Shown here one piece after another: positions 280 through 49,080 of a stretch of 64,000 nt of DNA (the first letter of the stretch is position 1; each line of letters opens with the position of its first letter). Under the pieces are notes generated by a model, which was not told where the DNA came from, did not search any database, and saw only the letters and a list, made by a program, of their open reading frames with translations. Position numbers and translations under genes: made by a program. The stretch spans positions 10,354,001 to 10,418,000 of the forward strand of contig NC_082712.1 of NCBI RefSeq assembly GCF_030144855.1, given 5' to 3'. This DNA comes from Hypanus sabinus (taxonomy: Eukaryota).

Positions 280-3200
280 TCTTACTGTACCATTAAATGG
301 CTATGGTGTGTTCTTCGCACCAGATGATGGAGAACTGGGAGACACAGAGTCTCCCGGGGAACCACATCTGCGTTAACTGCATCCGGCTGCAGCTCCTCGA
401 AAACTGTGTTAGGGATCTGGAGCAGCAACTGGATGACCTTCGGCTTGTACGGGAGAGTGAGAAAATAATTGATCAAAGTTACAGGGAAGTAGTCACCCTG
501 AAGTTGCAGGAAGAGAGTAGCTGGGAAAAATGGAAATAGGCAATTAGAGCAGAGCACCCCTGTGGCCATTCCCTTTAAAAACAGACCGCTTTAAATACTG
601 CCGTGGGGAATAATGTCCTGGGAGAATACCATGGCGACTGGGTTACAAGCACTGAACTTGGGTCAGTGGTGCTGAAGGGAAAGAGAGAGAAGAAAGGAGC
701 AGTAGTGATAGGGGACACAATAGTGAGGGGAACAGACAGGAGATTCTGTGGATGTGAATGGGACACCGAGATGGTATGTTGCCTCCCAGGTGCCATGGTC
801 AGGGATGTGTCAGATTACATCCACAACATTTTGGAGAGCGAGGGAAAGCAGTCAGATGTCTTGGTATATATTGGTACCAATGACTTAGGAAGGAAAAGCA
901 ATGAGGTCCTGAAAAGAGAATTTAGAGAGCTAGTTAGAAGGCTGAGAAGCAGGAACTCCCCAGTGGTAATGTCTGGATTGCTGCCTGTATCACACAGCAG
1001 TGAAGGTAGAAAAAGGATGATTTGGCAGATTAATGTGTGGCTGAGAAACTGGTGCAGGGAGCAGGGCTTCAGGTACTTGGATCTCTTCTGGAGGAGGTAT
1101 GATCTGTTCAAAAGTGACTGGTTACACCTGAACCCGGGGTCCAATATTCTCGAGAGCTGTTGGGGAGGGTTTAAGCTAATTTGGCAGTGGGGTGGGAACC
1201 AGAGTGGAGACACTCAGGATAGGACAAATAGTAAAAAAGTAAAGATAGCGTGCAGTCAGATTGTCAGGAAGGGCAGGCAGGTGGTGGGACTTAGTTGCAG
1301 CCACCAGGCTGTGTATCAGAACATTAGGGAAGCACAATCAGAAAGGATAGCAAATACAGTACTTGAGGTGTTGTATCTAAATGTGCGTAGTATAAGAAAT
1401 AAGGTGGATTATCTTGTTGCAGTATTGGGGGATCAGCTATACTAGGCTGGGTGTTATGTAATAAACCAGAAGTGATTAAGGAGCTTAAGGTAAAAGGACC
1501 CTAAGAAACTAGTGATCACAATATGATTGAGGTCAACTTATCTGATAGGGAGAGAGTAAAGTCTGATGTAGCAGTATTTCAGTGGAGTATAGGAAATTAC
1601 AGTGGTATGAGAGAGGAGTTGGCCAAAGTAAATTGGAAGGAGCTGCTTGCAGGGATGTCAGCAAAACAGCAAAGGCATGCGTTTCTGGGAAAAATGAGGA
1701 AGATGCAGGACATGTGTATTCCAGAAATGAAGAAATACTCAAATGGTAAAGTAGTACAACCGTGGCTGACAAGGGAAGTCAATGCTATTGTAAAAGCAAA
1801 AGAATGGACATACAACAAAGCAAAAATTAGTGGGAAATTAGAGGATCAGGAAGTTTTTAAAAACCTGTAGAGAACTAAAAGAAATTATTAGAAGGGAAAA
1901 TATGAAATATGAAAGCAAGCTAGCAAATAATATCAAAGTGAATAGTAGAAGTTTTTTCAATAATGTTAAAAATAAGAGAGAAATGAGAATGGATATAGAA
2001 TCACTAGAAAATGAGACAGGAGAAATAATAACAGGGGACAAGGAGATGGTTGATGAACTAAATGAGTATCTTGCATCAGTCTTCACTGTGGAAGACACTA
2101 GCAGTATTCCTGATGTTGTAGTGTGTGAAGGAAGAGAAGTTAGTGCAGTTACTATTACAAGAGAGAAGGTGCTCGAAAAGCTGAAAGACCTAAACATAGA
2201 AAACATACAGCACAATACAATGTCGAACATGTACTTACATTAGAAATTACCTCAGGTTACCCATATCCCTCTATTTTTCAAAGCTCCATGTACCTATCCA
2301 GGAGTCTTTTAAAAGACCCTATTGTATCTACCTCCACCACCATCACCGGCAGCCTATTCCACACACTCACCACTTTCTACATAAAAAACTTATCTCTGAC
2401 ATCGCCTTTGTACCTACATCCAAGCACCTTAAAACTGAGTCCTAAAGGTACATAAGTCACCCAGACTAGATGAAATGCACCCAAGGGTTCTGAAACAGGT
2501 AATGTAAGAGATTGTGGTGGCATTAGAAATGATCTTTCAAAAATCATTGGACTCTGGCATAGTGCCAGAGAACTGGAAAATTGCAAATGTCACTTTACTC
2601 TTTAAGAATGAAGGAAAACAGCAGAAAGGAAATTACAGATCAGTTAGCCTGACCTCAGTGGTTGGGAAGATGTTAGATTTAATTGTCATGGATGAGGTGA
2701 TGGAGTACTTGGTGACATAGGGCTAGATAATGCAGAGTTAGTATATTTTTCTTCAGGGAACACCTGCCTGATGAAGCTGTTGGAATTCTTTGAGGAGATT
2801 ACAAGTAGGACAGATAAAGGAGATGTTGTATATTTGGACTTTTAGAAGGCCTTTGACAAGGTGGCACATGTGAGGTTGCTTGCCATTTAGAGCCCATGGT
2901 GTTACAGGAAAGTTACTAATATGGTTAGAGCATTGGCTGATTGGTAGGAGGCAGAGAATGAAAATAACAGGATCCTTTTCTGGTTGGCTGCCAGTGACTA
3001 GTGGTGTTTCACAGGGGTCGGTGTTGGGACCACTTCTTTTTATGCTGTATATAGATATTTAGATGATAGAATAAAAAGGTTTGTTGGCAAAGATAGATGA
3101 TACGAAGATTGATGGAGGTGCAGGTAGTGTTGAGGAAACAGGTCGGATGGAGAAGGACTTAGACAGATTAGGAGAATGGGCAAGAAGGAGGCAAATGAAA

Positions 3201-3963
3201 ATCAATGTTGGAAAATGCATGGTCATGCACTTTGGTAGTAGAAATAAATGTGCAGACTATTTTCTAAATGGGGAGAAAATCCAAAAATATGAGATGCAGA
3301 AGGACTTGGGAGTCTTTGTGCAGAACACACTGAAGGTTAACTTGCAGGTTCAGATGGTGCTGAGGAAGGCAAATACCATGTTAGCATTCATTTCAAAAAG
3401 TATAGAATACAGGAGCAAGGATGTGATGGTGAGGCTTTATAAGGTACTGGAAAAGCATCACCTTGAGTATTGTGAACAGTTTTGGGCTGCTTATCTTGGA
3501 AAAGATGTGCTGGCATTGGAGAAGGTCCAGAGGAAGTTCTAAAGGATGATTCCAGGAATTAAAAAGTTATCATACAAGGAATATTTGATGGTATGCTGTA
3601 ATTCAGAAGAATGAGCAGGGATCTCATTGAAATCTGTCAAATGTTGAAAGGCCTAGACAGAGTAGATGTGGAAGGAGTGTTTCCCATGGCAGGACAGCCT
3701 CAGGATAGAGGGGCGCCCTTTCAAAACAGATGTGGAGAAATTTCTTTAGCCGAAGGGTGGTGAATTTGTTACCACATGCAGCTGTGGAGGTTTGGTCATT
3801 GGGTGTACTTAAGGCAGAGATTGATCTCTTAATTGGACATGGCATGAAGGCCGGAAACTGGGGTTGAGGCGGGGGGACAAAAAGGATCAGCCATGATTGA
3901 ATGGCGGAGCGGACTTGATGACCAGATGGCCTAATTCTGCTCTTATGTCTTATGGTCTTATGG
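280..3963 (+). mobile_element. CR1 LINE, near full length, decayed (ORF1 zinc finger + SGNH esterase; ORF2 endonuclease mostly deleted; RT)
   Basis: ORFs 297-539 (CxxC..HICxxC, leucine zipper), 603-1445 (VIGDTIVRG..IGTND), RT pieces 1902-3542 (NYRSVSLTS, SQGSVLGPLLF); (TCTTATGG)n tail. A reversed CR1 3' fragment is inserted at 2195-2440 with a CCTAAA duplication. Confidence 0.92.
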
Positions 3964-4437
3964 TGATTCAGTCAACAGCGGTGAACTTTGTTGGTAAATT
4001 TGTAAATGGTGGTGGAGCTGTGCTTAGCCACACAGTAGTTGGTTAATGGAGAAAAGAGCAGGGGTCTAAGCAGTCAGCCTGACTGCACCTGTACTGATTG
4101 TCAGAGAGGAGGAGATGATGTTCCTGATCTGCCAGTGACGAGGCAGAAGGACGTGTAAGAGAGATCCAGGTGTTGGCCCTTGGTGATGAGTTTAGAACTG
4201 TAGTCGATGAACAGTATGAGCTCCTGTTGTCCAGAGGGCCCAGTGGAGAATGGAGAGCCAGAGAAATCACATCTGCTGTTGACATGTTGTTGTAAAAGGC
4301 AAACTGGAGGGGGTCCAGGTAACTTCTGAGGCGGGAGTTAACTTGCGTCACAGCCAACCCTGGGAAGCATTCCATTACACTACATGAAGTTGTTGACCTG
4401 CCACACCACAGATTCAATAGCTTGTTGCCTGATGCAC
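3964..4437 (-). mobile_element. Rex1/Babar-clade LINE RT fragment
   Basis: Minus strand encodes LDPLQFAFYNNMSTADVISLALHS and the downstream RT-like segment, degenerate. Confidence 0.7.
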
Positions 4438-7400
4438 TGTCATATGGGGGGCATTCAGAGTGGACCCAATTGCAAGACACAGACACTGAACTACCAGGAA
4501 CAAGACTAGGCATGAGAAGGAAGCAAGGGAAGTGAGGAAGAAAGGACGTTGGACATGACACAGGCCCCGGACGAGACAAGGATTCTGGGCCTGGGCAAGG
4601 ACTTGACAAGGATAGTGGAACCAGGACATGGAACTGGGAACTAGGAGCCTGGGCTTGGACTATGAGCCAGAGACTGGGCAAGGACCCAGAACCTGGGTCT
4701 TGACTTGGGCTTAAAGTGGGGCCTGGACAAGGGCTAGACGAGGCTAGGGTTCTTCGAGGTTTGGGTCTGGATTTGGAGCCAGAGACTGGGCAAGGACCCA
4801 GAACCTGGGTCTTGACTCAGGCTCAAACTCCAGAACCAGGCAAGGAGAAGACGTGGCTATAAGATGAGGAGAGACAACAGGACTGGACGGGAGACTCCAG
4901 GACAGAACAAGGGAACCCCAGCACAAGATGGGAGAATCCCAGCACCAGGCTGGGCGAGGCATGTGGACAAGATGAGAACACAAAGCCACGGCTTGGACAG
5001 GACAAGGTTCTTGGACGTGGCTAGGACTGGACAAGACCCCGAAGCCTTGATGTGGTCAAGGAAGAGACAGGAATGAAGAGCCTTAGTCGAGGGAGAGACA
5101 GAATGCAGAGCTTTGGTCGAGGGAGAGACAGGAACATGGAATACAGAGCTGGGACCTCTCCTTGGGTACAGGTCATAGGGCTGGGACTCATTGCACAGAA
5201 TGCAGAATACGACGAGATGGCTCACAACACAAGGTAGTGGCAGACGGCTGGACCTACCTAGTGAAGGCATGGACACAGAGACAGTTCAAAACAACAAAAG
5301 AAAGTTCCTTATCATGCTCCAGTGGTAGAACTAGACAGCCGTGCAGGCGAGGCTCCAGGAGGAAGGTGAAGGGAAGGGATACAGACAGGGGGTTTGGACA
5401 GGATCAATCCAGCAGCCAGAGGCTGAATCCTGAAGCTATTTATGAAGCCAGCCCAAACGAGAATAAGCTGCCTCAACAGAAACTGGGGATACCTGGAAAA
5501 CCTGGAATAAGAAGCATGGACCGGATCATGAACAGAAATGCAAATTTCTCAGACCAGACCATGACAGTACCCCCCCCCCCCGCAACTCTATGGGAGCCTC
5601 CTGGTGACCCAAAAAGCTTCCCCAGACTAAGGATGACACAGGCAGATGCAGGGGGTCATTCAACAGGAGAGAACCCAGGATGCAAGAGTTAAACGACAGT
5701 GTTTGTGTTGCTGGGTCCAAGTCTGGCTGGATTGTTCTGTCATATGGGGGGAGGCGTTCAGAGTGGACCCAAATGTAAGACACAGACACGGAACTACCAG
5801 GAACAGGACTGGTAGTGAGAAGGAAGCAAGGGAAGTGAGGAAGAAAGGATGCTGGACATGACACAGACCCTGGACAAGGCAAGGATTCCGGGCCTGGGCT
5901 AGGACTGAACTAGAATAGCAGAACCAGGACATGGAACTGGGGACTAGGAGCCTGGCTTGGACTCCGAGCCAGAGACTGGACAAGGACCCAAAACCTGGTT
6001 CTTGACTCGGGCTCCAGAACCAAGCAAGGACAAGACATGGCTGCAGGATGAGGAGAGGCATCAGGACTGGATGAGAGACTCCAGGACAGGACAAAGGAAC
6101 CCCAGCACAGGACGAGGGAATCCCAGCACCGGGCTGGGCAATGTACTCATGGACTGGGTGATGCACATGGTCAAGATGAGAACACAAAGCCATGGCTTGG
6201 ACAGGACAAGGCTGGGTGGGTTCCAGTGATGTCATCGTCGAGAATGGCAGCTTAAGTCCTCCAGAAAAATGCACATTAAGCCTCATTAACCCATCAAATA
6301 TAGTACTTTTCAAAAGTATTTGAACTGATAAGAGGGGCAAGAATGGGGAAAAAGAATGGAAATTAAAAAAGTGACACTGCAGAGCCTGTGGCTGAGAAGA
6401 GTGCAGCAAGCGGCTCTCCTACCTGACCATGTGCTAGCGAGGCGGACGCTGGGCCTCGATCAGGCGAAGCAGCAAATATGATCGCAATTTTGAAAGAGAT
6501 AAGGGAGTTCCAGAAAGATATAAAACAGCAGCTACAAGATATTAAGTCAGAGCTCGCCAACGTCAATCAAAAAATAGTGGTGGCAGAGACTCGAATTGAG
6601 AAGGTGGAAGATCGCATTCAAAACATGGAACGGATACTAAGTAAGACAATAAAAGTATTAAATCAACAAGAAGGTAAGCTGCTTGACCTGGAGGGAAGAT
6701 CACGGCGGAAAAATATCAGAATATACAACGTTCCCGCAGGTGCAGAGGACTTGTCTATGACGGAGTTTATTGAAAAGTTGCTGCAGGATGTGCTAGAGCT
6801 TCCTTTGACTATGGAGCTGGAAATTGAGAGAGCACATCGTGCACTCATCCCGAAGCCTACCCGAGATAAGTCACGCTCAAAAATAATTAAATTCCTTCAA
6901 TACAGTACCAAGGTGGGTACTGAGAGGGTGTAATGAAATATCTTATCAAGTTTTTCCATCCAAACTCCCTCCATTTCTGTGAACTGGTATACTTCCATTG
7001 ATACCTCCATATTGTTGTCCATTCTTCCTCAGATATAATTTGGATGGAAAAGCTTGATAAGATATTTTATTACACCCTCTCAGAAATCCCATTATGATAG
7101 TAACCTCCCTGTTTGCTGGAGAAATTGTGGAAATCAAAATGCAAATCATTATCATATTTTTTGGGACTGCCCTGTTATCAAAAACTATTGGAGGGGGATA
7201 CACAATGCCCTACAAGACATCTTTAAATGTGAAATACCTTTAGAGATTAAAACCATATATTTTGGATATATACCTAAAGAATGGTTGAAAAGAGGTAAAT
7301 ATTTAATGAATATACTGTTGGTGGCTGATAAAAAGACTTTTACTAGGAAATGGTTATCACAGGAGAGCCCAACTTTAAATGCATGGATGGAAATTACAAT

Positions 7401-8411
7401 GGATATTTACAAAATGGAGAAGGTAAAAGCATCTGTTAATCATAAGCTGGAACAATTTGATTCATACTGGGAAAAATGGTTTAACTACATAATGCCTCAC
7501 AGGCCTGATTTTATTCTCACAAATCAATGAATCTGTTGTAAAAAAAATCACTCCCTACTTGTACATCGTTTTTTTTCCTTTTGCTTGTTTTTTCTCTCCC
7601 CTCTTTTCTGTAAGTGGATACCTCAGATAAATACTATGTGGAGATGTGTGATATATATGATTATATCATATATATGTAGAGTGTCTGAAATACATCTTAT
7701 GGAAATGCTTGTTTGATGATGAACTTCAATAAAAAAATAAAGTACAAAAAAAGGACAGGACAAGGTTCTTGGATGTGGCTAGGACTGGACAAGACCCTGA
7801 AGCCTTGACTTGGTCGAGGGAGAGACAGGAACACAGAGTCTTGGTTGAGGGAGAGACAGGAACGCAGAGCCTTGGTCGAACATGGAATACAGAGCTAGGG
7901 CCCCTCCTTGGGTACAGGACATAGGGCCAGGACTCATTACACAGAATGCAAAATACAATGAGACGGTTCCCAACACAAGGTGGCAGCAAATGGCCAGACC
8001 TACCTAGCCAAGGTGTGAACACAGACAGTTCCCAACACTAGGTAGTGGCAAACAGCCAGACCTACCTAGCAAAGGCATGGACACAGAGATAGTTCAAAAC
8101 AACAAAAGGCAGTTCCTTATCTTGCTCCAGTGGTAGAACTAGACAGCGGTGAAGGCAAGGCAAGGTGAGGCTCCAGGCAAGACGAGGCAAAGCAAGGCTC
8201 CAGGCAGAAGGTGATGGGAAGGGCTACAGACAGGGGGGTTGGACAGGAACAATCCAGCAGCCAGAGGCTGAATCCTGAAGCTATTTATGAAGCGAGCCCA
8301 AACGAGAATCAGCTGCCTCAACAGAAACTGAGGAAACCCAGAAAACCTGGAATAAGGAGCATGGACTGGACCGTGAACTGGAATATGGATTTCATGGACC
8401 GGACCATGACA
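4438..8411 (-). mobile_element. Non-autonomous Ty3/Gypsy-type LTR element with two LTRs and a 171-bp interior
   Basis: 5' LTR 5738-8411 (interrupted by an L1; about 1120 bp native) and 3' LTR 4438-5566, both TGTCAT...ATGACA. 5-bp TSD TGCAC (4433-4437 / 8412-8416); G-run PPT at 5567-5582; PBS at 5726-5737. Confidence 0.9.
6212..7752 (+). mobile_element. Internally deleted L1/Tx1 element nested in the 5' LTR
   Basis: ORF1 6478-6919 (coiled coil, LEGRSRRKNIRI, EIERAHR), ORF2 C-terminus 7054-7530 (CWRNC..HIFWDC), A-rich tail, 13-bp TSD GGACAGGACAAGG (6199-6211 / 7753-7765). Confidence 0.92.
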
Positions 8412-8449
8412 TGCACTGGTATCAGGGGAGACGTTGGTTTGGGACGGGA

Positions 8450-9250
8450 GATGGTCATGCACTTTGGTGGAAGAAATAAAGGGGCAGACTATTATTTAGA
8501 TGGTGAGAGAATATGAAAAATGCAGAGATGCAAAGGGGCTTGGGTGTCCTTGTGCAGGATACCCTAAAGGTTAACCTCCAGCTTGAGTCAGTGGTGAAGA
8601 AGGTGAATGTAATATTAGCATTCATTTCTAGAGGTATGAAGTATAAGAGCAGGGATTTGATGTTGAGGCTAGATAAGGCACTTGTGAGACCACACTTGAA
8701 GTACTGTGTGCAGTTTGGGCTCCTTATTTTAGAAAGGATATACAGACATTGGAGAGGTTTCAGAGAAAATTCACACGAATGATTCCAGGAATGAAAGGGT
8801 TACCATATGAGGAATGTCTGGTAGCTATTGGGCTGTATTCCCTGGAGTTCAGGAGAATGATGGGATATCTCATAGAAACATTCTGAATGTTAAAAGACAT
8901 GAACAGACGAGATATGGTCAAGTTATTTTCCATGGTAGGGGAGGCTAGAGCAAGAGGGCACTACTTCAGGATTGAAAGAGGTCCATTTAGAACAGAGATG
9001 CAGAGAAATTTAGTCAGAGGGTGGTAAGTCTGTGGAATTTGTTGCCATGAGTGGCTGTGGAGGCCAAGTCATTGGGTGCATTTAAGGCAGAGATAGATAG
9101 GCTGTTGATTAGCCAGGGCATCAAAGGGTATGGGTTAAAGGCAGGGAAGTGGGGATGACTGGAAGAATTGGATCAGCCCATGATTGAATGGCAGAGCAGA
9201 CTCGATGGGCTGAATGGCCTACTTCTGCTTCTATATCTTATGGTCTTATA
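8450..9250 (+). mobile_element. CR1 3' fragment
   Basis: ORF 8513-8782 (GVLVQDTLKVN..LVRPHLKYCVQF) and CTTATGGTCTTA tail. Confidence 0.85.
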
Positions 9251-9251
9251 G

Positions 9252-9859
9252 TCATTACAGGATCCTGAAGCAGTTTAACTCACACTGGTTACTTACACTG
9301 GCACAATCAAGAGGCAAACATCATTCATCAAAATCTTGCTTTAAAATACAAACTCATATAAGACATCATACCTTACTATAAATACAAGCCTGGCCCAGTT
9401 TTAGAGTCAGTCCTACAAATTACATTCTGACCAATGCTTAATTACACAAAGAGACATGATATTAATCATCCAGATATGACATTTGAGAAAAAACATGTAA
9501 GAACAATTTACTTTAATAGATCTGTCCATTCCAAATACATGTAACATACAGAAATCAATAAGTGAAAAATACCAGAAATATGCTGAATTAACAGGGGAAG
9601 TTGAAAGACTATGGAACATGAACAGGGTATACATTGACCCAATAGTAATATTTACAACTGGTATCATCCCAAAGTCACTGCACAATACCATCAAACAGTT
9701 AACCCTACACAGTAATATCTATGTAAATCTTCAGAAAGCCACAATACTAAACACCACTAGAATAGTTCCTACCAGTTGTGAAATTAGTAGGCTTGGCTAT
9801 GCCTGCACCTCAGGTTTTGCCAGCTTGAGCTGAGAAAAAGTAAATATATAATAACAGTG

Positions 9860-23809: not shown

Positions 23810-25270
23810 AATTTAGACCATAAGGCCAACCTGACATTCCATCATGGCTGATTTATTAACCCTCTCAATTCCATACTCCTGCCTTCGTCCCATAACCCTT
23901 GCCACCATGACTAATCAAGAGCTTGTTAATCTCCACTTTAAATTTCTGGTCTGTGGTAATGAATTCCACAGATTCACCACCCTCTGCCTAGAGAAACTCC
24001 TTCTCATCTCTGTTCTAAAGGGACATCCCTCTATTGTGAGGCTGTGCCCTCTGGTCCTAGATTCTCCCACTATAGGAAACATGCTCTCCACATCCATTCT
24101 GTCTAGGCCTTTCAATATTCTATAGGTTCCAGCAAGATTCCCCCCTCCCCCATCATTCTAAACTCCAGAGAGTACAGGCCAGTGGCCAGTTAGCCCTTTC
24201 ATTTCTGGGATCATTCTCATGAACCCCCCGGACCCTCTCCAAAGCCAGGACATCTTTTCTTAGTATGGGGCTCAAAACTGCTCACAATGGTCCAGTCTGA
24301 CCAAAGCCTCGTAAAGCCACATCATCCCATCCTTGCTTTTATATTCGAGTCCCCTCAAAATGAATGCTAACATTGCATTTGCCTTCCTTACCACTGACTC
24401 AACATGCAAGTTAACCTATAAGGAGTCCTGAATGAGGACTCCCAAATCCCTTTGTACCTCTGATATGCTGAACTCATTTTCATGTTCTTCCCACACCAAC
24501 CTAGATTCTATCAATCACCCCAACTAGGGGCATTTTACATAACATGACTTGCACGCCTCTGGGGTGTAAAAGGGTGTCAGAGAAACCCAGGCATTCACGG
24601 GGAGATAGTACAAACTCCACACAGCTGATGCTGGTGGTCAGATCCCCAGTGATTGGGGTTCACACCCACAGATAACTCCAAGTTGCTGTGCTCATTGATG
24701 GGGTGGTTCGGAAAGCGAATGGTGTGTTAGTCTTCATTCGTCCAGGGATTGAAATCAAGAACCACAGGACCCTACAAAACCCTATTTAGACCACACTTGG
24801 AGTGTTGTGTTCACTTCTGATCACTTCATTAGAGGAAGGACGTGGAAGCTCCAGAGAGGGTGCAGAGGAGATTTACTGGGACGCAGCCTGGACTAGAGAG
24901 CATGCCTCATGAGGATAGATTAAGCAAGCTCAGGCTTTTCTCTTTGGAGCAAGGGAGGTGAGGGCCGACTTGACAGAGGTGTACCAGATGATAAGATGAT
25001 AAGGGTTGAAATGACTAATATGTCGAAGCAGTTTTAAAGTGATTGGAGGTAGGTCTTTACACACAGAGTGGTGGGTGCTAGGAGCCCACCCACCAGGGGT
25101 GGTGGTAGAGGCAGGTACATTACGGACATTTAAGATACTCCTGGATAGGCAAATGAATGGATGGCAGAACGGAGGCAATGTGGGAGGGAAGAGTTAGATT
25201 GATCGGAGGGTAGGTTATAAGGTCAACATTGTGGGCTGAAGGGCCTGTGCTGTGCTGTACGGTCCAATGT
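23810..25270. mobile_element. CR1 3' fragments in opposite orientations (about 23810-24450 minus, 24690-25270 plus) in intron 3
   Basis: ORF 23915-24115 (GLDRMDVESMFP..GHSL) and matching plus-strand 3' sequence. Confidence 0.75.
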
Positions 25271-25311
25271 TGCATGCTCCCCTTCCTCCCTCACCCCCTG
25301 TGGTTTCTCAC

Positions 25312-25686
25312 CAGGTCTGACCCGCAGATGGGCCTCATACTGGGACAGATGGATGCTCGAGGGCGAGATAATTTCGAGGTCAGTCCTGGTCCTGAACTCA
25401 GCCAGACACAGGTAGCTGTGACTGTCCTCCACACTCAGCTGCTTTATCCTGGTCCAGGCGCTTCCCCGCTCTGGGTCCCCGATGAGCTCGTACCGCGTCA
25501 CTCCGTTTTCCACTACCCACGATCCATTTCGAATACGCCTGAAGGTGACGATGTGTCGGTAGGGATTCTTCCTCATCCACGTCACCGTGTGTGCGGTGAG
25601 GCTCTGCGGAGGCCGTGTGAACACACAGGGTAACGTGGCCGAAGCTCCTTCAGTTCCAGTCACCTCCGAATCTTTTCCATCAGAAG
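25312..25686 (-). CDS. Exon 3, Ig V-set domain 2 (Siglec-15-like)
   Basis: Acceptor cctcctctcAG, donor G|GTGAGA, 375 nt, phase 1-1: ..GASATLPCVFTRP..VTWMRKNPY..RYELIGDPERGS..EDSHSYLCLAEF..HLRVRP. Motifs LPCxFTxP, WxxxxPY, RxxLxGxP and YxCxxEF match the Siglec-15 V domain as recalled. Confidence 0.92.
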
Positions 25687-27111
25687 CTGAGAGGAGGACA
25701 GACACCCGACAGGATTGATTCATAAACAGTTCCAAGCAAAGAGTGAGGAGAAGAGAGGGAGGTTTCTTAGACAAACTTGGAAATCTGAACCAGTGCCTCG
25801 AATCACACTGAATAAGTTTTAGACACAACACTGGACATCCCAGTAGGAAGGGTAGAGAGATCAGAGGCCCGATGCCCAGAAAGAAAGATCTCGAGCCGTG
25901 TGGTGCAGGTTGTTCCCCAGGGATCAGATCCCGTACTCTTGGTGGTGGGGTCTGAGGTCTCACACTGGTGTTGAAGATCAGTGAAGATGTGGCTGGTCAG
26001 TAACTCTATCATCCACATCCCAGAAGATCCCTAGTGCAGTTGGTGCCCAACACACACACATACACACTCCTACAGTGCATGTACCCAGAAACAAACACAA
26101 ACACACACATCGCTCCTTCTTATACCATTACCACACTTCAGACTTCCACACATTTCTGGCTGATCAGCCACAGCAAGCATGTCTCACCGATGCACTTCCC
26201 GCTCACTTGTACACTGGAGGCAGTTGGAAAGTGAGCCAGTGACAGCCTCTGGATGTGACGGTGACAGTGGTAGTGGTGGAAGACACTGTCCAGTGACTGC
26301 ACAAGCAAGACCAGTCCACCCACTACCATCATTTGGATTTGGGCCTCAACCTCTCACATTGCCTGGGTGCCTTTCTTCGTTCCGATGTCCCGGGAACACC
26401 AGCCACTCAGGGTGTCACTATTTAGCAGGAGAACAAAGGCGGCTGTCACTAGAGAAGGTGTGGTCAGCCACCAGCTCAGACCCTGGCACTCCTCAACCCA
26501 AGTCAGCCAAGGGGACATCTCCTCAGAGGGTGGCTGAGGGACTTGATGTCCGAAAAGTATCTGCTGCACTCTGTTGGATTGGAGTGCAGAATTGGTATTT
26601 TTTCTAGTAATTAGCTTGTAGTTTAACCCTTCTGTGCTTGCTTCTAATTTTTATATAATCGCTGTACGTAGACTCAATTGTTCAGTAAATTTTCTAGTGA
26701 TTATAGTATAGCTGATTCTCTATTTTCTCAGCAAGACGTGAGGGCTGGGGTCAGTAAGTTGTTGGCATGCTACGTTGATGCCAAGAGAAGGGCAACACTT
26801 ACGGGATGCTCTCCAGAACATCTTTGGTCTGTGTTGGTTGCTGACGCAAATAACACATATCACTATATGTTTTGACATGACAAATAAAGTGAATCTGACC
26901 TAACCTCCCATGCAGTCACTGGGGGATGCACAAAGCTCCTTACAGACAGTGGTGGGAATTGAACCAGGATCACTGGCACTGTGAAGTGCTGTGCTAACTG
27001 CTACACTACCATTGCCCACCCCTATTTGTCTCTGAACTGTGGTGGCTGTTATGAGTACACCACACTGGCAAGTCTGTTGTGTTGCAAGCCAAAGTTCAAA
27101 CTTTATTTATC

Positions 27112-30100
27112 CATATAACCATATAACAATTACAGCACAGAAACAGGCCATCTCGGCCCTTCTAGTCCGTGCCGACGCTTACACTCACCTAGTCCCACTG
27201 GCCCACACTCAGCCCATAACCTTCCATTCCTTTCCTGTCAATATACCTATCCAATTTTGCTTTAAATGACAATACCAAACCTGCCTCTGTCACTTCTACT
27301 GGAAGCTCATTCCACACAGCTACCACTCTCTGAGTAAAGAAATTCCCCCTCATGTCACCCTTAAACTTTTGCCCCCTAACTCTCAAATCATGTCCTCTTG
27401 ATTGAATCTCCCCTACTCTCAATGGAAAAAGCCTATCCACATCAACTCGATCCATCCCCTCATTATTTTAAATACCTCTATCAAGTCCCCCCTCAACCTT
27501 CTATGTTCCAAAGAATAAAGACCTAACTTGTTCAGCCTTTCCCTGTAACTTAGGTGCTGCAACCCAGGTAACATTCTAGTAAATCTTCTCTGTACTCTCT
27601 CTATTTTGTTGATATATTTCCTATAATTCGGTGACCAGAACTGTATACAATACTCCAAATTTGGCCTTACCAATGCTTTGGACAATTTTAACATTACATC
27701 CCAACTCCTATACTCAATGCTCTGATTTATAAAGGACAACATACCAAAAGCTTTCTTCACCACCCTATCCACATGACATTCCACCTTCAGGGAACTATGC
27801 ACCATTATTCCTAGATCACTCTGTTCTATTACATTCTTCAATGCCCTACCAATTACAATGTAAGTCCTATTTGGATTATTCCTACCAAAATGTAGCACCT
27901 CACACTTATCAGCATTAAACTCCATCTGCCATCATTCAGCCCACTCTTCTAAATGACCTAAATCTCTCTGCAAGCTGTGAAAACCTACTTCATTATCCAC
28001 AATGCCACCTACCTTAGTATCATCTGCACACTTACTAATCCAATTTACCACCCCATCATCCAGATCATTAATGTATATGACAAACAACATTGGACCCAAT
28101 ACAGATCCCTGAGACACACCACTAGTCACCAGCCTCCAAGCTGACAAACAGTTATCCACCACTACTCTCTGGCATCACCCATCCAGCCACTGTTGAATCC
28201 AGTTTACTACTTCAATATTAATACCTAACGATTGAACCTTCCTAACTAACCTTCCATGCGGAACCTTGTCAAAGGCCTTACTGAAGTCCATATAGAAAAC
28301 ATCCACTGCTTTACCCTCGTCAACTTTCCTAGAAACCTCTTCAAAAAATTCAATAAGATTTGTCAAACATGACCTTCCACGCACAAATCCATGTTGACTA
28401 TTCCTAATTAGACCCTGTCTATCCAGATAATTATATATACCATCTCTAAGAATACTTTTCATTAATTTACCCACCACTGACATCAAACTGACAGGCCTAT
28501 AATTGCTAGGTTTACTCTTAGAACCCTTTTTAAACAATGGAACCACATGAGAAATATGCCAATCCTCCGGCACCATCCCCGTTTCTGATGACATTTGAAA
28601 TATTTCTGTCAGAGCCCCTGCTATTTCTACACCAACTTCCCTCAAGGTCCTAGGGAATATTCTGTTAGGATCCAGAGATTTATCCACTTTTATATTCCTT
28701 AATAGCGCCAGTACTTCCTCCTCTTTAATCGTCATAGTTTCCATAACTTCCCTACTTGTTTCACTTAACTTACACAATTCAATATCCTTCTCCTTAGTGA
28801 ATACTGAAGAAAAGAAATTATTCAAAATCTCCCCCATCTCTTTTGGCTCCACACATAGCTGTCCACTCTGATTCTCTAAGGGACCAATTTTATCCCTCAC
28901 TATCCTTTTGCTATTAATATAACTGTAGAAACCCTTCGGATTTATTTTCACCTTATTTGCCAAAGCAACCTCATATCTTCTTTTAGCTTTTCTAATTTCT
29001 TTCTTTACATTCTTCATATTCCTCGAGCACCTCATTTACTCCATGCTGCCTATTTTTATTGTAGATCTCCCTCTTTTTCCGAACCAAGTTTTCAATATCC
29101 CTTGAAAACCATGGCTCTCTCAAACTTTTAACCTTTCCTTTCAACCTAACAGGAACTTAAAGATTCTGTACCCTCAAAATCCACTCCTTCTAAGTCCTTT
29201 CACATCTCCTCAAAGTTAGCCTTTCTCCAATCAAAAATTTCAACCCTGGGTCCAGTCCTAACCTTCTCCATAATTATATTGAAACTAATGGTATTGTGAT
29301 CACTAGACCTGAAGTACTCCCCAACACATACGTCCGTCACCTGACCTATCTCATTCCTTAACAGGAGATCCAACACTGCCCCTCCTCTAGTTGGTACCTC
29401 TATGTATTGTTGCAAAAAAACTATCCTGCACACATTTTACAAACTCCAAGCCATCCAGCCCTTTTACAGAATGGGCTTCCCAGTCTATATGTGGAAAATT
29501 AAAATCTCCCACAATCACAACCTTGTACTTACTACAAATATCTGCTATCTCCCTGCAAATTTGCTCCTCCAATTCTCACTCCCCATTAGGTGGTCTATAA
29601 TACACCCCTATAAGTGTTACTACACCTTTCCCATTCCTCAATTCCATCCAAATAGTCTCCCTAGATGAGCCCTCTAATCTATCCTGCCAAAGCACTGCTG
29701 TAATATTTTCTCTGACAAGCAATGCAACACCTCCCCCTCTTGCCCTTCCAATTCTATCACACCTGAAGCAACGAAATCCAGGAATATTTAATTGCCAATC
29801 ACACCCCTCCTGCAACCATGTTTCACTAATAGCTACAACATCATATTTCCAGGTATCAATCCATGCTCTAAGCTCATCCACCTTTCTTACAATGCACCTA
29901 GCATTAAAATAGATGCATTTAAGAAACTTTACACCTCTTCCTCTCTGTTTATCCCTAATGATGTGATCCACTTTATTATCTTTTTCTTCCTTCTCCCCTA
30001 CATCTTCGGTCTGAGCGCTCCCCTTCTTTATCACCTGTCTATCCTCCCTCACACACGGTCTACTAGCTTTCTCTATTTGTGAACTAAACTCCTCTCCCCT

Positions 30101-31224
30101 AGTCTCTTCAAATTGATTCCCACCCCCTAACAATTCTAGTTTAAAGTCTCCCTTGTAGCCTTAGCAAATGTCCCCGCCAGCATATTGGTCCCCCTCAGAT
30201 TCAAGTGTAACCCATCCTTTTTGTAGAGGTCACACCTGCCCCAGAAGATGTCCCAATGATCCAGAAACTTGAACCCCTGCCCGCCCTGCTCCAATCCTTC
30301 AGCCACGCATTCATCCTGTACCTCATTCCATTCCTACTCTCACAGTCGCGTGGCACAGGCAGTAATCCCGAGATTACTACCTTTGTGGTCCTTCTCCTCA
30401 ACTGCCTATACTCTCCTTTCAGGACCTCTTCCCTTTTTCTTCCTATGTCATTGGTACCTATATGTACCACGACCTCTGGCTCCACACCCTCCCACTTCAG
30501 GATATCTTGCACGCGATATGAAACATCCTGCACCCTGGCACCAGGGAGACAAACTACCATCTGGGTCTCCTGATCACGTCCACAGAATCACCTATCTGAC
30601 CCCCTAACTATCAAGTCCCCTATTACTACTGCCTTCTTCTTCCTTTCCCCTACCCTTCTGAGCTACAGGGCCGGACTCTGTGCTAGAGGCATGGCCACTG
30701 TTGCTTCCCCCAGGTAGGCTGTCCTCCCCTTATTATCAAGCAGTACAGCCACTGGGGTGCTCTCTAGTACCTGACTCTTCCCCTTCCCCTACCTGTCTGC
30801 CTCTTGTGGCCCTGGTGTGACCACCTGCCTATAATTCAACTCCTCACCCTCCCTGACCAGATGAAGGTCATCGAGCTGCAGCTCCAGTTCCCTAACACAG
30901 TCCCTTAGGAGCAGCAGCTCGGCACACCTGGTGCAGATGTGGATGTCCGGGAGGCTAGGAGACTTCAGAACCTCCCACATCCAACACTGGGAACAACAAG
31001 TTGCCCGCACGCTCATACTTCCCCCTTTCCTCAAATAACAGGAAAAACTGAAACCTAAACCTACGTTGCCTCACCTGTTTCTGCCTAAGCCCATTGAGCC
31101 AAAGCCCTTAAGCCTTCACTCTGCTCCCGGCTCACTCCGCTCCCCGCTGTATAAGGCTGTGTTCCTTTTAAATCTTCCGCGCTTCACTGCCCGCCGTCAC
31201 ACGACTGCGAGTCCTGCCTCTCTT
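27112..31224 (-). mobile_element. CR1 LINE, full length, decayed, in intron 2
   Basis: 5' UTR; ORF1 zinc finger (30789-31034) and esterase (30201-30560); APE endonuclease (CIYFNAR..VAISETWL..GGGVAL; SSDHN); RT 28175-29035 and 27932-28162; (TTATATGG)n tail. Confidence 0.95.
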
Positions 31225-45157: not shown

Positions 45158-48100
45158 GCCACAAGATCACAAGATCACAAGACAGAGGAGCGGCAGTAGG
45201 CCATTCGGCCCATCGAGTCTGCTCCAACACTCCATCATGAGCTAAACTATTCTCCCATCTAGTTCCAATTTCTGGCTTCTCCCCCATATCCCTTGATACT
45301 CTGAATAATTAGATACCTGTCAATCTCCTCCTTAAAAACCCTCAAGGACTGCGCCTCCACAGCTATATGTGGCAACGAATTCCATACATCCATGACCCTC
45401 CAGCTAAAAAAATTTCTCCTCATCTCTGTTTTAAATGGGTACCCTCTAATTCTAAGACTGTGGCCCCTTGTCCTGGACTCACCCACCAAGGGAAACAGTC
45501 TTTCCACATCTACTCTGTCCAACCCTTTCAACGTTCAAAATGTTTCTATGAGATCCCCTCTCATTCTTCTGTACTCTAATGAATACAATCCAAGAGCTGA
45601 CAAACTCTTCTCATATGTTAGTCCCTGCATTCCAGGAATCATCCTCATAAATCTTCTTTGAACTCTCTCCAATATCAGCACATCCTTGCTAAGATAGGGG
45701 GCCCAAAACTGCACACAGTATTCCAAATGGGGTCTCACTAGTGCCCCATAGAGCCTCATCAACATTTCCTTACTCTTATACGCTATTCCTCTTGAAATGA
45801 ATGCCAAAATAGCATTCACTTTCCTTACTGCCGATCCAACCTGGTGGTTAACCTTTAGGGTTTCCTGCAGTAGGACCCCCAAGTCCCTTTGCACTTCTGA
45901 TTTTTGAATTTTCTTCCCATCTAAATAATAATCTGCCCGATTGTTTCTTCTTCCAAAATGTACAACCGTACATTTCTCAACATTGTATCTCATCTGCCAT
46001 TTCTTTGCCCACTCTCCTAAACTGACCAAGTCTCTCTGCAACCTTTCCGTTTCTTCAACACTTCCTGCTCCTCCATCTGTCTTGGTGTCATCTGCAAACT
46101 TAGCCATAAAACCATTTAATCCATAATCTAAATCATCGATATGCAGTGTAAAAAGAAGCAGCCCCAACACCGATCCTTGTGGAACACCACTAGTAACCAG
46201 CAACCAACCAGAATAGGATCCCTGTATTCCCACTCTTTGCTTTCTGCCTATCAGCCAATGCTCCACCCATTCCAATATCTTTCCTGTAATTCCATGAGCC
46301 CTCATCTTATTAAGCAGCCTCTTCTGTGACACCTTATTGAAGGCCTTTTGAAAATCCAAATACACAACGTCCACAGCCTCTCCCTTGTCAATCTTATTCG
46401 AGATTACCTCAAAAAATTCCAATAGGTTGGTGAGGCAGGATCTTCCCTTCATAAAACCATGCTGGCTTGGGCCTATCTTGTCATGCACCTCAAGGTAATT
46501 CATAACCTCGTCCTTGAGGATCGACTCTAATAACTTTCCAACTACCAATGTCAGACTAATAGGTCTGTAATTTTCTTTTTGTTGCCTCCCTCCTTTCTTA
46601 AACAGCGGAACTACATTTGTGACCTTCCAGTCCTCCGGAACCGTGCCAGAGTCTACTGATTCCTGGAAGATTATTTCCAATGCCTCCACAATCTCCAAAG
46701 CCACTTCCTTCAGAACCCATGGGTGCACTTCACCCGGTCCGGGAGACTTATCTGTCCTTAGTCCATTTAGCTTCCCAAGCACTTTCTCTCTAGTAATCTT
46801 GACTGTACCTAATTCTATTCCCTGAGACCTCCAGCTATCAGGTATGTTGCTAATGTCTTCCACTGTGAAGACTGATGCAAAATACTCATTTAGTTCCTCT
46901 GCCATCTCTTTGTTACCCATTATAATTTCTACAGCGTCATTTTCAATCGGTCCTATATCTACCCGTGTCACTCTTTTACTCTTCATATTTTTTTTAAAAC
47001 TCTTAGTGTCCTTTTTTATATTAATTGCCAATTTCCTGAAATAATTCATCTTTTCTTTCCTAATGACTTTCTTAGTTTCTTTCTGTAATTTTATAAAATT
47101 CGTCCAGTGCTCAGTTTTCCCACAAATTTTTGCTTCCATGTACGCTGTCTCTTTTGCTTTTATTTTAGCCTTAACTTCTCTCGTTAGTCACATTTGTGCC
47201 ATTTTTCCTTTTATGATTTTCTTTTTTCTTGGAATATACTTTTCCTGCACTTTCCTTATTTCTTGTAGGAATTTCATCCAGTTCTGCTCTACTGTCCCTC
47301 CATTTAGCTTACTTTTCCAATCAACTGGGGCCAGTTCCTCTCTCATACCACTGTAATTTCCTTTGTTCCACTGAAATATCGATACACCTGATACCGGCTT
47401 CTCCTTTTCAAATTTGAAACTGAATTCAATAATATTATGATCACTACTTCCAAGGGGTTCCATTACCTCTCGCTCCCTAATCACCTCAGGTTCATTACAC
47501 AGCACCCAGTCCAAAACAGCCGACCCCCTGGTGGATTTATGGACAAGCTGCTCCAGAAAACAATCCCGTAGGCATTCTACAAACTCCCTCTCCGGAGATC
47601 CAGAACCTTCCTGACTTTCCCAATCCACTTCCATATTAAAATCTCACATAATTATCTTGACATTTACCTTCTGACACGCTTTTTCTATTTCCAGCTGTAA
47701 CTTGTAGTCCACATCCCAGCTGCTGTTTAGAGGCCTGTATATAACTGCTATTAGTGTCTTTTTACCCTTGCAGTTTCTTAACTCAACCCATAGGGATTGT
47801 ACTTCTTCTGATCCTGTGTCCCTTCTTTCTAGTGATTTCTAGTACACTTAGATCAGTATCTGTTACTGATTTTGTTATTTATCTATCGCACAGCAAATTA
47901 CCCTGTCTATTCACCTGCCTGTCCTTCTTGCCATCTTTGCTGCACAGTATCCTTGACTTATTTCTATTTTCTTCTTCTTCAACCCTTACACCCTGATTTC
48001 CTTCCCCTTGCCAATTTAGTTTAAACCCTCCTTAACAGCTATATTAAACAATCCTGCCAGGATAATTAGTACCCTTTGAGTTCAGGTGTAACTCATCGTT

Positions 48101-49080
48101 TCTGTATAAGTCATGCCTCCCCCAAAATAGATCCCAGTGATCTAAGAATTTGAAGCTCTGCCCTCTGCACCAGTTACTTAGCCACACATTCATCTGCTTT
48201 ATTCTGCTATTCTCACCATCGTTGGCACGTGGCTCAGGCAGTAATCCTGAGATTATTACTCTAGAGGTCCAGCTTTTCAATTTTCTTCCTAGCTCCCAGT
48301 ACTCTTCCTTCAGGACCTCCTCTCTTTTTCTGTCCATCTCATTGGTACCAACATGTACCAAGACTTCTGTTTGCTCGCCCTCTCTCCTGAGAATACTCTG
48401 GACCCGATCCAAGATATCCCGTACTCTGGAACCAGGGAGGCAACACACCATTCGAGTATCCTTGTCCGGCTCGCAGAATCTCTTGTCTGTTCCCCACAGG
48501 ATGGAATCCCCTATAATGACAGCATTTCTCCTTGCTCTCTTGATCACGGCACTGGGCAGAGTGCCAGAGTCCCGTTCATTGTGGTCTTTCTCCGTCTGGT
48601 CAACCTCTCCAACAGTATCTAATAATATATATCGATTCCTGAGGGGGACTGTCACAGAGGGGCTGTCCACTATCTCTCTATAGGTACTATCGATCACCTC
48701 CTCACTTTCTCTAATTAGCTGAAGGTCATCAAGTTATTGCTGCAGATCCCTCACACGATCCCTAAGGAGCTTCATCTCATTGCATCTTGAGCAGATGTAA
48801 TCCTGGGGGAGAGGAATCTCCCAAGGTCCCCACATCTGGCACTCCAGGCACAACACTAATCCTAAATGCATACCTCTAACGCTACTGTTATCTCTAAATA
48901 AATAAACCTGTAACCTACCACTTAACTGTAAGACTCAGCGATTGCAGGGAGCCTCTTCCCATTTCCGCCAAAGCCCTATCACTCTGTACCCATTCACTCC
49001 GCTGCCTGCTGGATATGGCGGTATTCTTTTTAAATCTTCCGCGCTCTGAGGTCACGCACCTGCGCAGTCGTGCCTCTTTT
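45158..49080 (-). mobile_element. CR1 LINE with native 5' end and an uninterrupted 534-aa RT ORF; endonuclease N-terminus deleted
   Basis: ORF 45535-47139 (NYRPISLT, QHGF, VYLDFQKAF, PQGSVLG, FADD), esterase ORF 48044-48697, (TCTTGTGA)n tail. Confidence 0.95.

What the first reader, a model, noticed from the sequence alone, without database searches (positions are those of the whole stretch)
4438..8411. Miniature LTR element whose PBS pairs with its own predicted 5' end (Tf1/sushi-type self-priming, TRIM-like)
Seen: a complete element on the minus strand with two ~1.12-kb LTRs (TGTCAT...ATGACA), a TGCAC TSD, a G-run PPT and only 171 bp between LTRs. The PBS (GAACAATCCAGC, 5737-5726) lacks the TGG start of a tRNA-primed PBS. 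It is the exact reverse complement of GCTGGATTGTTC in the 5' LTR (8258-8247), which begins 30 nt downstream of a TATA-like ATAAATA (8288-8282), where transcription would start. The 3' LTR has the same motif with one mismatch (5402-5413). The interior keeps only a TTG-GAC-CCA-GCA gag-start-like remnant and a pol-end-like LRGGG running into the PPT. Established: Tf1/sushi-group chromoviruses prime reverse transcription by folding the first ~11 nt of the RNA onto the PBS and cutting it with RNase H. Inference: this is a non-autonomous self-priming family mobilised in trans, needing no tRNA.
Basis: partly seen in the sequence, partly recalled or inferred. Interest (0 to 1): 0.8.

Follow-up and report, generated by a model that had tools for sequence, protein, structure and literature searches.

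The report
Gene-less self-priming LTR retrotransposon copy
This is an old, dead copy of a gene-less LTR retrotransposon whose primer site pairs with a short stretch of its own repeat instead of a tRNA; the priming trick is already known from Tf1/sushi elements, here seen in a stripped-down, very abundant family.

Summary
On the minus strand lies an LTR element with these parts:
- a 5-bp target duplication (GTGCA);
- a 1129-bp 3' LTR;
- a 171-bp interior;
- a G12 polypurine tract;

The 12 nt directly after the 5' LTR are the exact reverse complement of LTR positions 154-165. That stretch begins 30-31 nt after the only TATA-like motif. A match this long at that place arose in 5 of 5000 shuffles.

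Contigs from four other organisms add three points. The LTR is a very high-copy dispersed repeat. The short interior recurs in other copies, so it is a family trait and not a local deletion. The single mismatch in the 3' LTR 12-mer is private to this copy, because the family majority letter restores perfect pairing.

Self-primed reverse transcription in trans is therefore the best reading (about 0.65). Several things remain untested or unmet:
- the transcription start is unmapped;
- no poly(A) signal lies downstream of it;
- the Tf1 "pretzel" side helices are not supported;
- no autonomous partner was found;
- chromovirus membership cannot be tested;
- the TRIM size definition is not met.

First-reader notes in this scan report self-complementary PBS signatures in other LTR families of this genome.

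The parts
8412..8416 (-). Upstream copy of the 5-bp target-site duplication (GTGCA on the minus strand).
   Evidence: read directly. It is identical to 4433-4437.
7753..8411 (-). 5' LTR, first part. It starts TGTCAT and holds the short U3, the TATA-like motif and the start of the predicted R.
   Evidence: It aligns to the 3' LTR (5566-4995).
8281..8289 (-). CATAAATAG. This is the only TATA-like motif in the LTR and also the only poly(A)-signal-like hexamer (CATAAA). It lies at LTR positions 123-130.
   Evidence: It is identical in both LTRs.
8247..8258 (-). Predicted self-primer GCTGGATTGTTC, at LTR positions 154-165. It is taken as the predicted first 12 nt of the transcript.
   Evidence: It is the exact reverse complement of 5737-5726, and the duplex energy is -18.8 kcal/mol.
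6212..7752 (+). Nested LINE fragment, not part of the element. It carries a coiled-coil ORF (6478-6933), an ORF2 C-terminal zinc-knuckle ORF (7054-7530) and an A-rich tail. It is flanked by a 13-bp target duplication at 6199-6211 and 7753-7765.
5738..6211 (-). 5' LTR, second part, ending ATGACA at 5738.
5726..5737 (-). Primer-binding site GAACAATCCAGC. It starts at the first base after the LTR and has no TGG start.
5567..5737 (-). Whole interior, 171 bp, with no gene.
   Evidence: It recurs in other copies in other organisms (records 16, 23, 32 and 7).
5570..5581 (-). Polypurine tract: a run of 12 G, 3 nt before the 3' LTR.
   Evidence: The run length varies between family copies (table 4, places 5582-5583).
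4438..5566 (-). 3' LTR, 1129 bp, TGTCAT...ATGACA.
   Evidence: At 4438, 53 contigs of run X3 run on into unlike flanks (agreement 0.35), so the terminus is real and the insertion sites are many (table 7).
5402..5413 (-). 3' LTR copy of the 12-mer, with one private mismatch at 5404.
   Evidence: table 3: the plus-strand T at 5404 reads A in 94-99% of the laid depth in all four runs.
4433..4437 (-). Downstream copy of the 5-bp target-site duplication.

Best explanation
This is an old, inactive copy of a high-copy, non-coding LTR retrotransposon family. The family keeps only cis signals: long LTRs, a 12-nt primer-binding site and a G-run polypurine tract. It starts reverse transcription by self-priming, not with a tRNA.

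Proposed cycle:
1. The 5' LTR is transcribed from about G8258, 30-31 nt after CATAAATAG.
2. The first 12 nt fold back about 965 nt onto the PBS that abuts the LTR end.
3. The RNase H of a reverse transcriptase supplied in trans cuts after nt 12.
4. The freed 3'-OH primes minus-strand DNA.
5. The G-run primes the plus strand.
6. Integration makes a 5-bp duplication.

Shown here: the element's anatomy, the exact complementarity and its placement, its conservation in the family, the multi-copy short interior, and many insertion sites.

Inferred: the transcription start, the cut, the trans-acting partner and the extent of R.
For: - Structure: complete LTR-PBS-PPT-LTR layout with a 5/5 target duplication.
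- Placement: the 12/12 complement begins exactly at the first base after the LTR and stops at the LTR boundary. A primer's 3' end defines exactly that boundary.
- Chance: 5 of 5000 shuffles give 12 nt or more at offsets 0-5.
- Start site: the 12-mer begins 30-31 nt after the only TATA-like motif, at a pyrimidine-purine step. The preferred spacing and the pyrimidine-purine rule are from my own knowledge.
- Family conservation: the majority letter at 5404 restores full complementarity in the 3' LTR 12-mer in four organisms (table 3).
- Conserved block: LTR positions about 62-195 (promoter plus primer) and the last 65 nt carry 3-10 times the depth of most other LTR bins. This copy shows few listed differences from the family majority there (tables 2 and 3).
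- Short interior in other copies: X3 record 16 spans 5433-5742, X5 record 23 spans 5552-5810, X6 record 32 spans 5422-5643 and X2 record 7 spans 5683-5872. Interior depth is 93-398, against 1.5-8.5 in the adjacent flank.
- Literature: self-priming is established for Tf1 and is predicted for Tf1/sushi elements of fungi, vertebrates and non-seed plants (PMC10085805, PMC6317226, PMC4600332).
- LTR type: in the Sushi-clade LTR logo, an AT-rich stretch that could serve as the TATA box lies near the 5' end, U3 is T-rich and the termini are TGTYANR...CNTNACA (PMC3601003). Here the termini are TGTCATG...TATGACA.
Against: - No RNA data, so the start site is a prediction.
- Neither LTR has a canonical or common variant poly(A) hexamer after position 154. 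CATAAA itself is the only one, so R and U5 cannot be drawn.
- The primer and PBS would be about 965 nt apart, which by my recollection is far more than in Tf1.
- The two side helices of the Tf1 pretzel are no better than shuffles (p 0.20 and 0.70).
- No autonomous partner was seen in the window or anywhere else.
- The PBS state in other copies was not shown directly. The difference table is truncated.
- The PBS region was not compared with a tRNA set.
Confidence: 0.65

Rival explanations
1. The A-rich motif is the poly(A) signal, not a TATA box. The 12-mer would then sit at or just past the R/U5 border. The PBS-LTR duplex would be a long-range RNA structure, for example one that masks the 5' poly(A) site or organises the leader. 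Priming would be done by something else, or by an internal cut and not by the very 5' end.
For: CATAAA is the only poly(A)-like hexamer in the A-poor LTR, and U/GU-rich sequence follows it at positions 158-185. In metazoan Metaviridae LTRs the AATAAA motif is better conserved than the TATA box (PMC3601003). First-reader notes in this scan describe other Gypsy families of this genome whose PBS slot complements the poly(A)-signal segment of their LTR. Those notes are unchecked.
Against: U5 would be about 960 nt, which is very unusual. The duplex ends exactly at the LTR boundary, as a primer 3' end would require. The complement starts 30-31 nt after the motif, which is the usual TATA-to-start spacing, whereas cleavage is usually 10-30 nt after the hexamer (the usual spacings are from my own knowledge). 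The conserved block reaches about 60 nt upstream of the motif, as a promoter would. No tRNA-type TGG PBS lies within 17 nt of the LTR.
Confidence: 0.17
2. The short interior is a one-off deletion at this locus in an otherwise ordinary full-length element.
For: The window holds no second copy. The LTR is much more abundant than the interior.
Against: Contigs from other organisms carry the same interior from LTR to LTR, or across each junction, at only 80-88% identity, so they are different copies. Interior depth is tens of times that of the flank in all four runs.
Confidence: 0.03
3. The 12-nt complementarity is a coincidence, and the element is primed by an unidentified tRNA or tRNA fragment.
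For: Not compared with a tRNA database. A TGG lies 18 nt downstream of the LTR.
Against: The shuffle frequency is about 0.001 even when six offsets are allowed. There is also the placement 30-31 nt after the TATA-like motif, and the family majority letter keeps the pairing. A PBS 18 nt from the LTR would be atypical.
Confidence: 0.06

Closest known systems
Tf1/Tf2 of Schizosaccharomyces pombe and the Tf1/sushi group of chromoviruses, including the vertebrate sushi elements (Butler et al. 2001, as cited in PMC10085805 and PMC4600332)
   Same: There is no tRNA PBS. A PBS of about 11-12 nt directly after the 5' LTR (which ends CA) is complementary to a segment of the LTR placed at the predicted transcript start. 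The TATA-like motif lies near the 5' end of the LTR. The termini are of the TGTYANR type. The target duplication is 5 bp.
   Different: It has no gag or pol, so it cannot be placed by pol phylogeny or by a chromodomain. The primer-to-PBS distance is about 965 nt. The pretzel side helices are not supported. [quoted passage not shown]
TRIMs (terminal-repeat retrotransposons in miniature), and other non-autonomous LTR elements such as LARDs
   Same: The interior is non-coding and reduced to a PBS and a PPT. The family is multi-copy. Mobilisation in trans is presumed.
   Different: As defined in PMC6934838, TRIMs are under 1 kb with 100-250-bp repeats and a tRNA-complementary PBS. This element has 1.1-kb LTRs, is about 2.4 kb in total and has a self-complementary PBS. 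LARDs have long interiors (from my own knowledge); this one is 171 bp.
Other LTR families of the same genome that first-stage readers flagged as having a self-complementary PBS (Gypsy with a 16-nt duplex onto the poly(A)-signal segment; one BEL/Pao element)
   Same: The general signature is the same: the PBS slot is complementary to the element's own LTR and not to a tRNA.
   Different: Those notes describe coding elements and a 16-nt duplex across the poly(A) signal. Their sequences could not be seen here, so any relation or partner role is unknown.

Membership tests
Self-priming LTR retrotransposons (Tf1-type mechanism) | A PBS directly downstream of the 5' LTR that is complementary to a sequence in the LTR itself. 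| tested here: met
   12/12 at offset 0. 5 of 5000 shuffles reach 12 nt.
Self-priming LTR retrotransposons (Tf1-type mechanism) | No PBS complementary to a tRNA 3' end. | tested here: inconclusive
   The interior has no TGG within its first 17 nt. No tRNA set was available, and the window has no tRNA gene.
Self-priming LTR retrotransposons (Tf1-type mechanism) | The complementary segment is the very 5' end of the element's mRNA. | not testable with these tools
   It is only predicted from the 30-31-nt spacing after CATAAATAG and a T/G step. No RNA holder was on record.
Self-priming LTR retrotransposons (Tf1-type mechanism) | A three-duplex "pretzel" structure around the primer-PBS helix (PMC10085805). 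| tested here: inconclusive
   The central helix is strong: -18.8 kcal/mol, extended by TGTC:GACA after a 1-nt bulge. The side duplexes score -11.9 and -7.1 kcal/mol, no better than shuffles (p 0.20 and 0.70).
Self-priming LTR retrotransposons (Tf1-type mechanism) | RNase H cut after the primer. | not testable with these tools
   This is biochemical.
Tf1/sushi chromoviruses (Metaviridae) | Pol phylogeny and an integrase chromodomain. | not testable with these tools
   The element has no coding sequence. The window has no Gypsy pol. No partner could be retrieved.
Tf1/sushi chromoviruses (Metaviridae) | Sushi-type LTR termini TGTYANR...CNTNACA, with the candidate TATA stretch near the 5' end (PMC3601003). 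| tested here: inconclusive
   The 5' terminus TGTCATG fits. The 3' terminus TATGACA fits 4 of the 5 specified positions. The non-chromoviral rGmr1 termini are almost the same.
TRIM | Total length under about 1 kb, with terminal repeats of 100-250 bp. | tested here: not met
   The LTR is 1129 bp and the element is about 2.4 kb without the nested LINE. The definition is from PMC6934838.
TRIM | A non-coding interior that starts with a PBS and ends with a PPT. | tested here: met
LTR retrotransposon (general) | Two direct LTRs with TG...CA ends, a target-site duplication, and dispersed copies with different flanks. | tested here: met
   Loose ends at 4438 run into diverse flanks (table 7).

The most novel reading that the evidence does not exclude
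A very abundant family has been stripped to the bare cis signals for self-primed reverse transcription. It is shared by many related species: 31-mers are shared with runs of 16 coded organisms, and four of them were laid. The signals kept are a 12-nt 5' primer, its PBS, a G-run PPT and long LTRs. One A-rich motif may serve both as TATA box in the 5' LTR and as U3-borne poly(A) signal in the 3' LTR. This would be a natural minimal substrate for self-priming in vertebrates, and it would show that the fold-back works over about 1 kb.
Probability: 0.3. Interest if true: 0.55.

Novelty: new variant of a known kind. Interest (0 to 1): 0.38.

Why it matters
Self-priming has been worked out experimentally chiefly in fission-yeast elements and is only predicted elsewhere. 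A gene-less, high-copy vertebrate family that keeps the primer and PBS pair would show which cis signals are enough for self-primed replication in trans. It would also show that the fold-back tolerates a leader of about 1 kb. Practically, annotation pipelines that look for tRNA-type PBSs would miss or mis-class such elements. For this locus itself the element is old (LTR K2P 0.13), broken by a LINE insertion, and has no evident effect on a gene.

Tried and rejected
- Other copies in the window: none.
- Spurious ORFs across the LTR and interior used as protein handles to fetch other copies: no hits.
- Exact-pattern scans of metagenome and viral contig collections with conserved LTR stretches: no hits.
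- Look-up of a window LINE ORF, to learn the source record: not on record.
- Rfam: only a sub-threshold MIR821 match on the hairpin inside the nested LINE, and nothing on the LTR element.
- tRNA scan of the window: none, so no host tRNA was available to compare with the PBS.
- Pretzel side helices: not above shuffles.
- Solved-structure search for the nested ORF1: only weak coiled-coil matches.
- Reading as a one-off deletion: rejected.
- Gag-start and pol-end remnants in the interior: too short to test, and no evidence.
- The Tf1 primary papers (PMC109269, PMC1369541, PMC230564) are not held.
- I did not fold the whole leader with the LINE insert removed, and I built no family consensus.
Full report
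**Anatomy**

Reading 8550-4300 on the minus strand and the repeat search show an LTR element.
- The LTRs begin TGTCAT at 8411 and 5566 and end ATGACA at 5738 and 4438.
- The five bases before the element (8416-8412) and after it (4437-4433) are both GTGCA.
- Between the LTRs lie 171 bp (5737-5567). They end in a run of 12 G (5581-5570), then TAC, then the 3' LTR.
- The 3' LTR is 1129 bp.
A 1541-bp insert (6212-7752) sits between two copies of a 13-bp duplication (7765-7753 and 6211-6199), with an A-rich tail at its plus-strand 3' end.
- The insert carries a coiled-coil ORF (6478-6933) and an ORF (7054-7530) with a Cys/His motif. That ORF resembles chordate "reverse transcriptase zinc-binding domain" fragments. 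It is a rearranged LINE fragment that arrived later.
- With the insert set aside, the LTRs align over 997 sites at 88.2% identity (87 transitions, 31 transversions, K2P 0.13). They differ by several repeat-unit indels. This copy is old.

**The primer site**

- The first 12 nt of the interior, GAACAATCCAGC (5737-5726), are the exact reverse complement of GCTGGATTGTTC at 8258-8247, which is LTR position 154-165.
- The pairing starts at the first base after the LTR and stops at the LTR boundary. After a one-base bulge it can continue with TGTC:GACA.
- In 5000 dinucleotide-preserving shuffles of the LTR, a complement of 12 nt or more starting 0-5 nt after the LTR appeared 5 times.
- The 12-mer begins 30-31 nt after CATAAATAG (8289-8281). 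That is the only TATA-like motif in either LTR, and the start falls on a T/G step.
- From my own knowledge, this is the usual TATA-to-start spacing in vertebrates.
- The interior has no TGG within its first 17 nt, so there is no ordinary tRNA 3'-end PBS.
- I had no host tRNA set to exclude internal tRNA fragments, because the window has no tRNA gene.

**Family evidence**

- 31-mers of the 3' LTR plus interior are shared at 12-17% with runs of 16 differently coded organisms. That is about what an abundant family would give a copy roughly 6% from its consensus.
- I laid Logan contigs of four organisms on 4300-6300 at 80% likeness. Five points follow.
  1. Depth jumps from 1.5-8.5 in the adjacent flank (4367-4433) to 10^3 to 6x10^4 inside the LTR. 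In run X3, 53 contigs run on from 4438 into unlike flanks (agreement 0.35). The LTR end is therefore real and the repeat is dispersed.
  2. The interior is covered at 93-398.
3. Other copies carry the same interior. X3 record 16 spans 5433-5742 and X5 record 23 spans 5552-5810, so both cover all 171 bp. X6 record 32 (5422-5643) and X2 record 7 (5683-5872) cross each junction with more than 31 nt on both sides. All are only 80-88% identical, so they are different copies.
  4. At 5404, the one mismatch in the 3' LTR copy of the 12-mer, 94-99% of the depth in all four runs reads the letter that restores GCTGGATTGTTC. At family level the LTR 12-mer is therefore fully complementary to this PBS.
  5. 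The best-kept parts of the LTR are positions about 62-195 (upstream of the TATA-like motif through the 12-mer) and the last 65 nt.
- The difference table was truncated, so I cannot state the PBS letters of other copies. None appeared among the majority differences listed for the interior.
- X2 record 1 joins the flank to the LTR end with 4 differences, so organism A has this same insertion.

**Mechanism**

The best reading is self-primed reverse transcription of the Tf1 type. In it the first bases of the transcript pair with the PBS, RNase H cuts the duplex, and the new 3'-OH primes minus-strand DNA. The mechanism is established for Tf1. It is predicted for the Tf1/sushi group in fungi, vertebrates and non-seed plants (PMC10085805; PMC6317226; PMC4600332).

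The strongest structural argument is placement. A primer's 3' end defines the U5 boundary, and here the duplex ends exactly there. Because the element has no gene, the proteins must come from another element.

**Weak points**

- No RNA evidence was available.
- The sense strand is A-poor (15% A). It has no AATAAA or common variant after position 154, and CATAAA inside the TATA-like motif is the only candidate. R and U5 therefore cannot be drawn, and the motif could be the poly(A) signal instead. That reading echoes unchecked first-reader notes on other Gypsy families of this genome.
- I rate this rival lower for three reasons. It needs a U5 of about 960 nt. It does not explain why the duplex ends at the LTR boundary. 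The conserved block also extends about 60 nt upstream of the motif.
- The fold-back would span about 965 nt.
- The two side helices of the Tf1 pretzel are not better than shuffles (p 0.20 and 0.70).

**Classification**

- Functionally it matches self-priming LTR elements.
- Membership of the Tf1/sushi chromoviruses cannot be tested without pol.
- The termini (TGTCATG...TATGACA) fit the Sushi pattern TGTYANR...CNTNACA at all but one specified position. They fit the non-chromoviral rGmr1 pattern as well (PMC3601003).
- It is not a TRIM by the usual size definition (PMC6934838).
- Literature searches found no description of a non-autonomous self-priming LTR family. The library is partial and TE databases could not be consulted.

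**Partner search**

- The window has no Gypsy pol. It holds only LINE RT and endonuclease ORFs, two GDSL-esterase ORFs and a V-set domain.
- Attempts to fetch other copies failed, both through ORF handles and through exact scans of other collections.

**Verdict**

It is overstated on the TRIM and chromovirus labels and on the coding remnants. This is a modest extension of a known mechanism to a stripped-down, very abundant family.

Noticed in passing
window 6212-7752 (+): The LINE fragment nested in the 5' LTR is internally rearranged. A 45-nt segment at the start of the ORF2 C-terminal part occurs twice in inverted orientation (6920-6964 and 7039-7083, 96% complementary), forming a hairpin. 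Rfam scores this hairpin as a sub-threshold MIR821 match. Both flanking ORFs are still open, so the insert is much younger than the LTR element.
   Followed up: partly
window 3500-3968 and 8733-9256: Two same-orientation copies of one repeat, 75-90% alike in several collinear blocks, flank the LTR element. The right-hand copy follows on an ORF (8513-8782) that looks to me like a LINE-type C-terminal region. Without the LTR element they would lie about 1.3 kb apart.
   Followed up: no
window 7961-8087, 4650-4827, 5055-5134, 7809-7879, 8347-8409: The LTRs hold internal tandem repeats whose copy number differs between the two LTRs. There is a 62-nt unit doubled only in the 5' LTR, a 112-nt-spaced 66-nt unit doubled only in the 3' LTR, 30-31-nt units in both, and a 33-nt unit at the U3 start of the 5' LTR. 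In other organisms' contigs the 66-nt unit is among the deepest parts.
   Followed up: partly
window 603-1445 (+), 48044-48697 (-), 45535-47139 (-), 28175-29035 (-), 29576-30133 (-): Several LINE pieces: two ORFs with GDSL-esterase domains (presumably esterase-type ORF1s of non-LTR elements), two reverse-transcriptase ORFs and one endonuclease ORF.
   Followed up: partly
window 25223-25963 (-): An ORF with an immunoglobulin V-set domain. First-reader notes place Siglec-15-like V-domain genes just upstream of this window.
   Followed up: no
whole genome (scan notes): Many first-reader notes on this genome report LTR elements (Gypsy and one BEL/Pao) whose PBS slot is complementary to their own LTR and not to a tRNA. 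If they hold up, tRNA-independent priming may be common in this genome and not limited to one clade.
   Followed up: no
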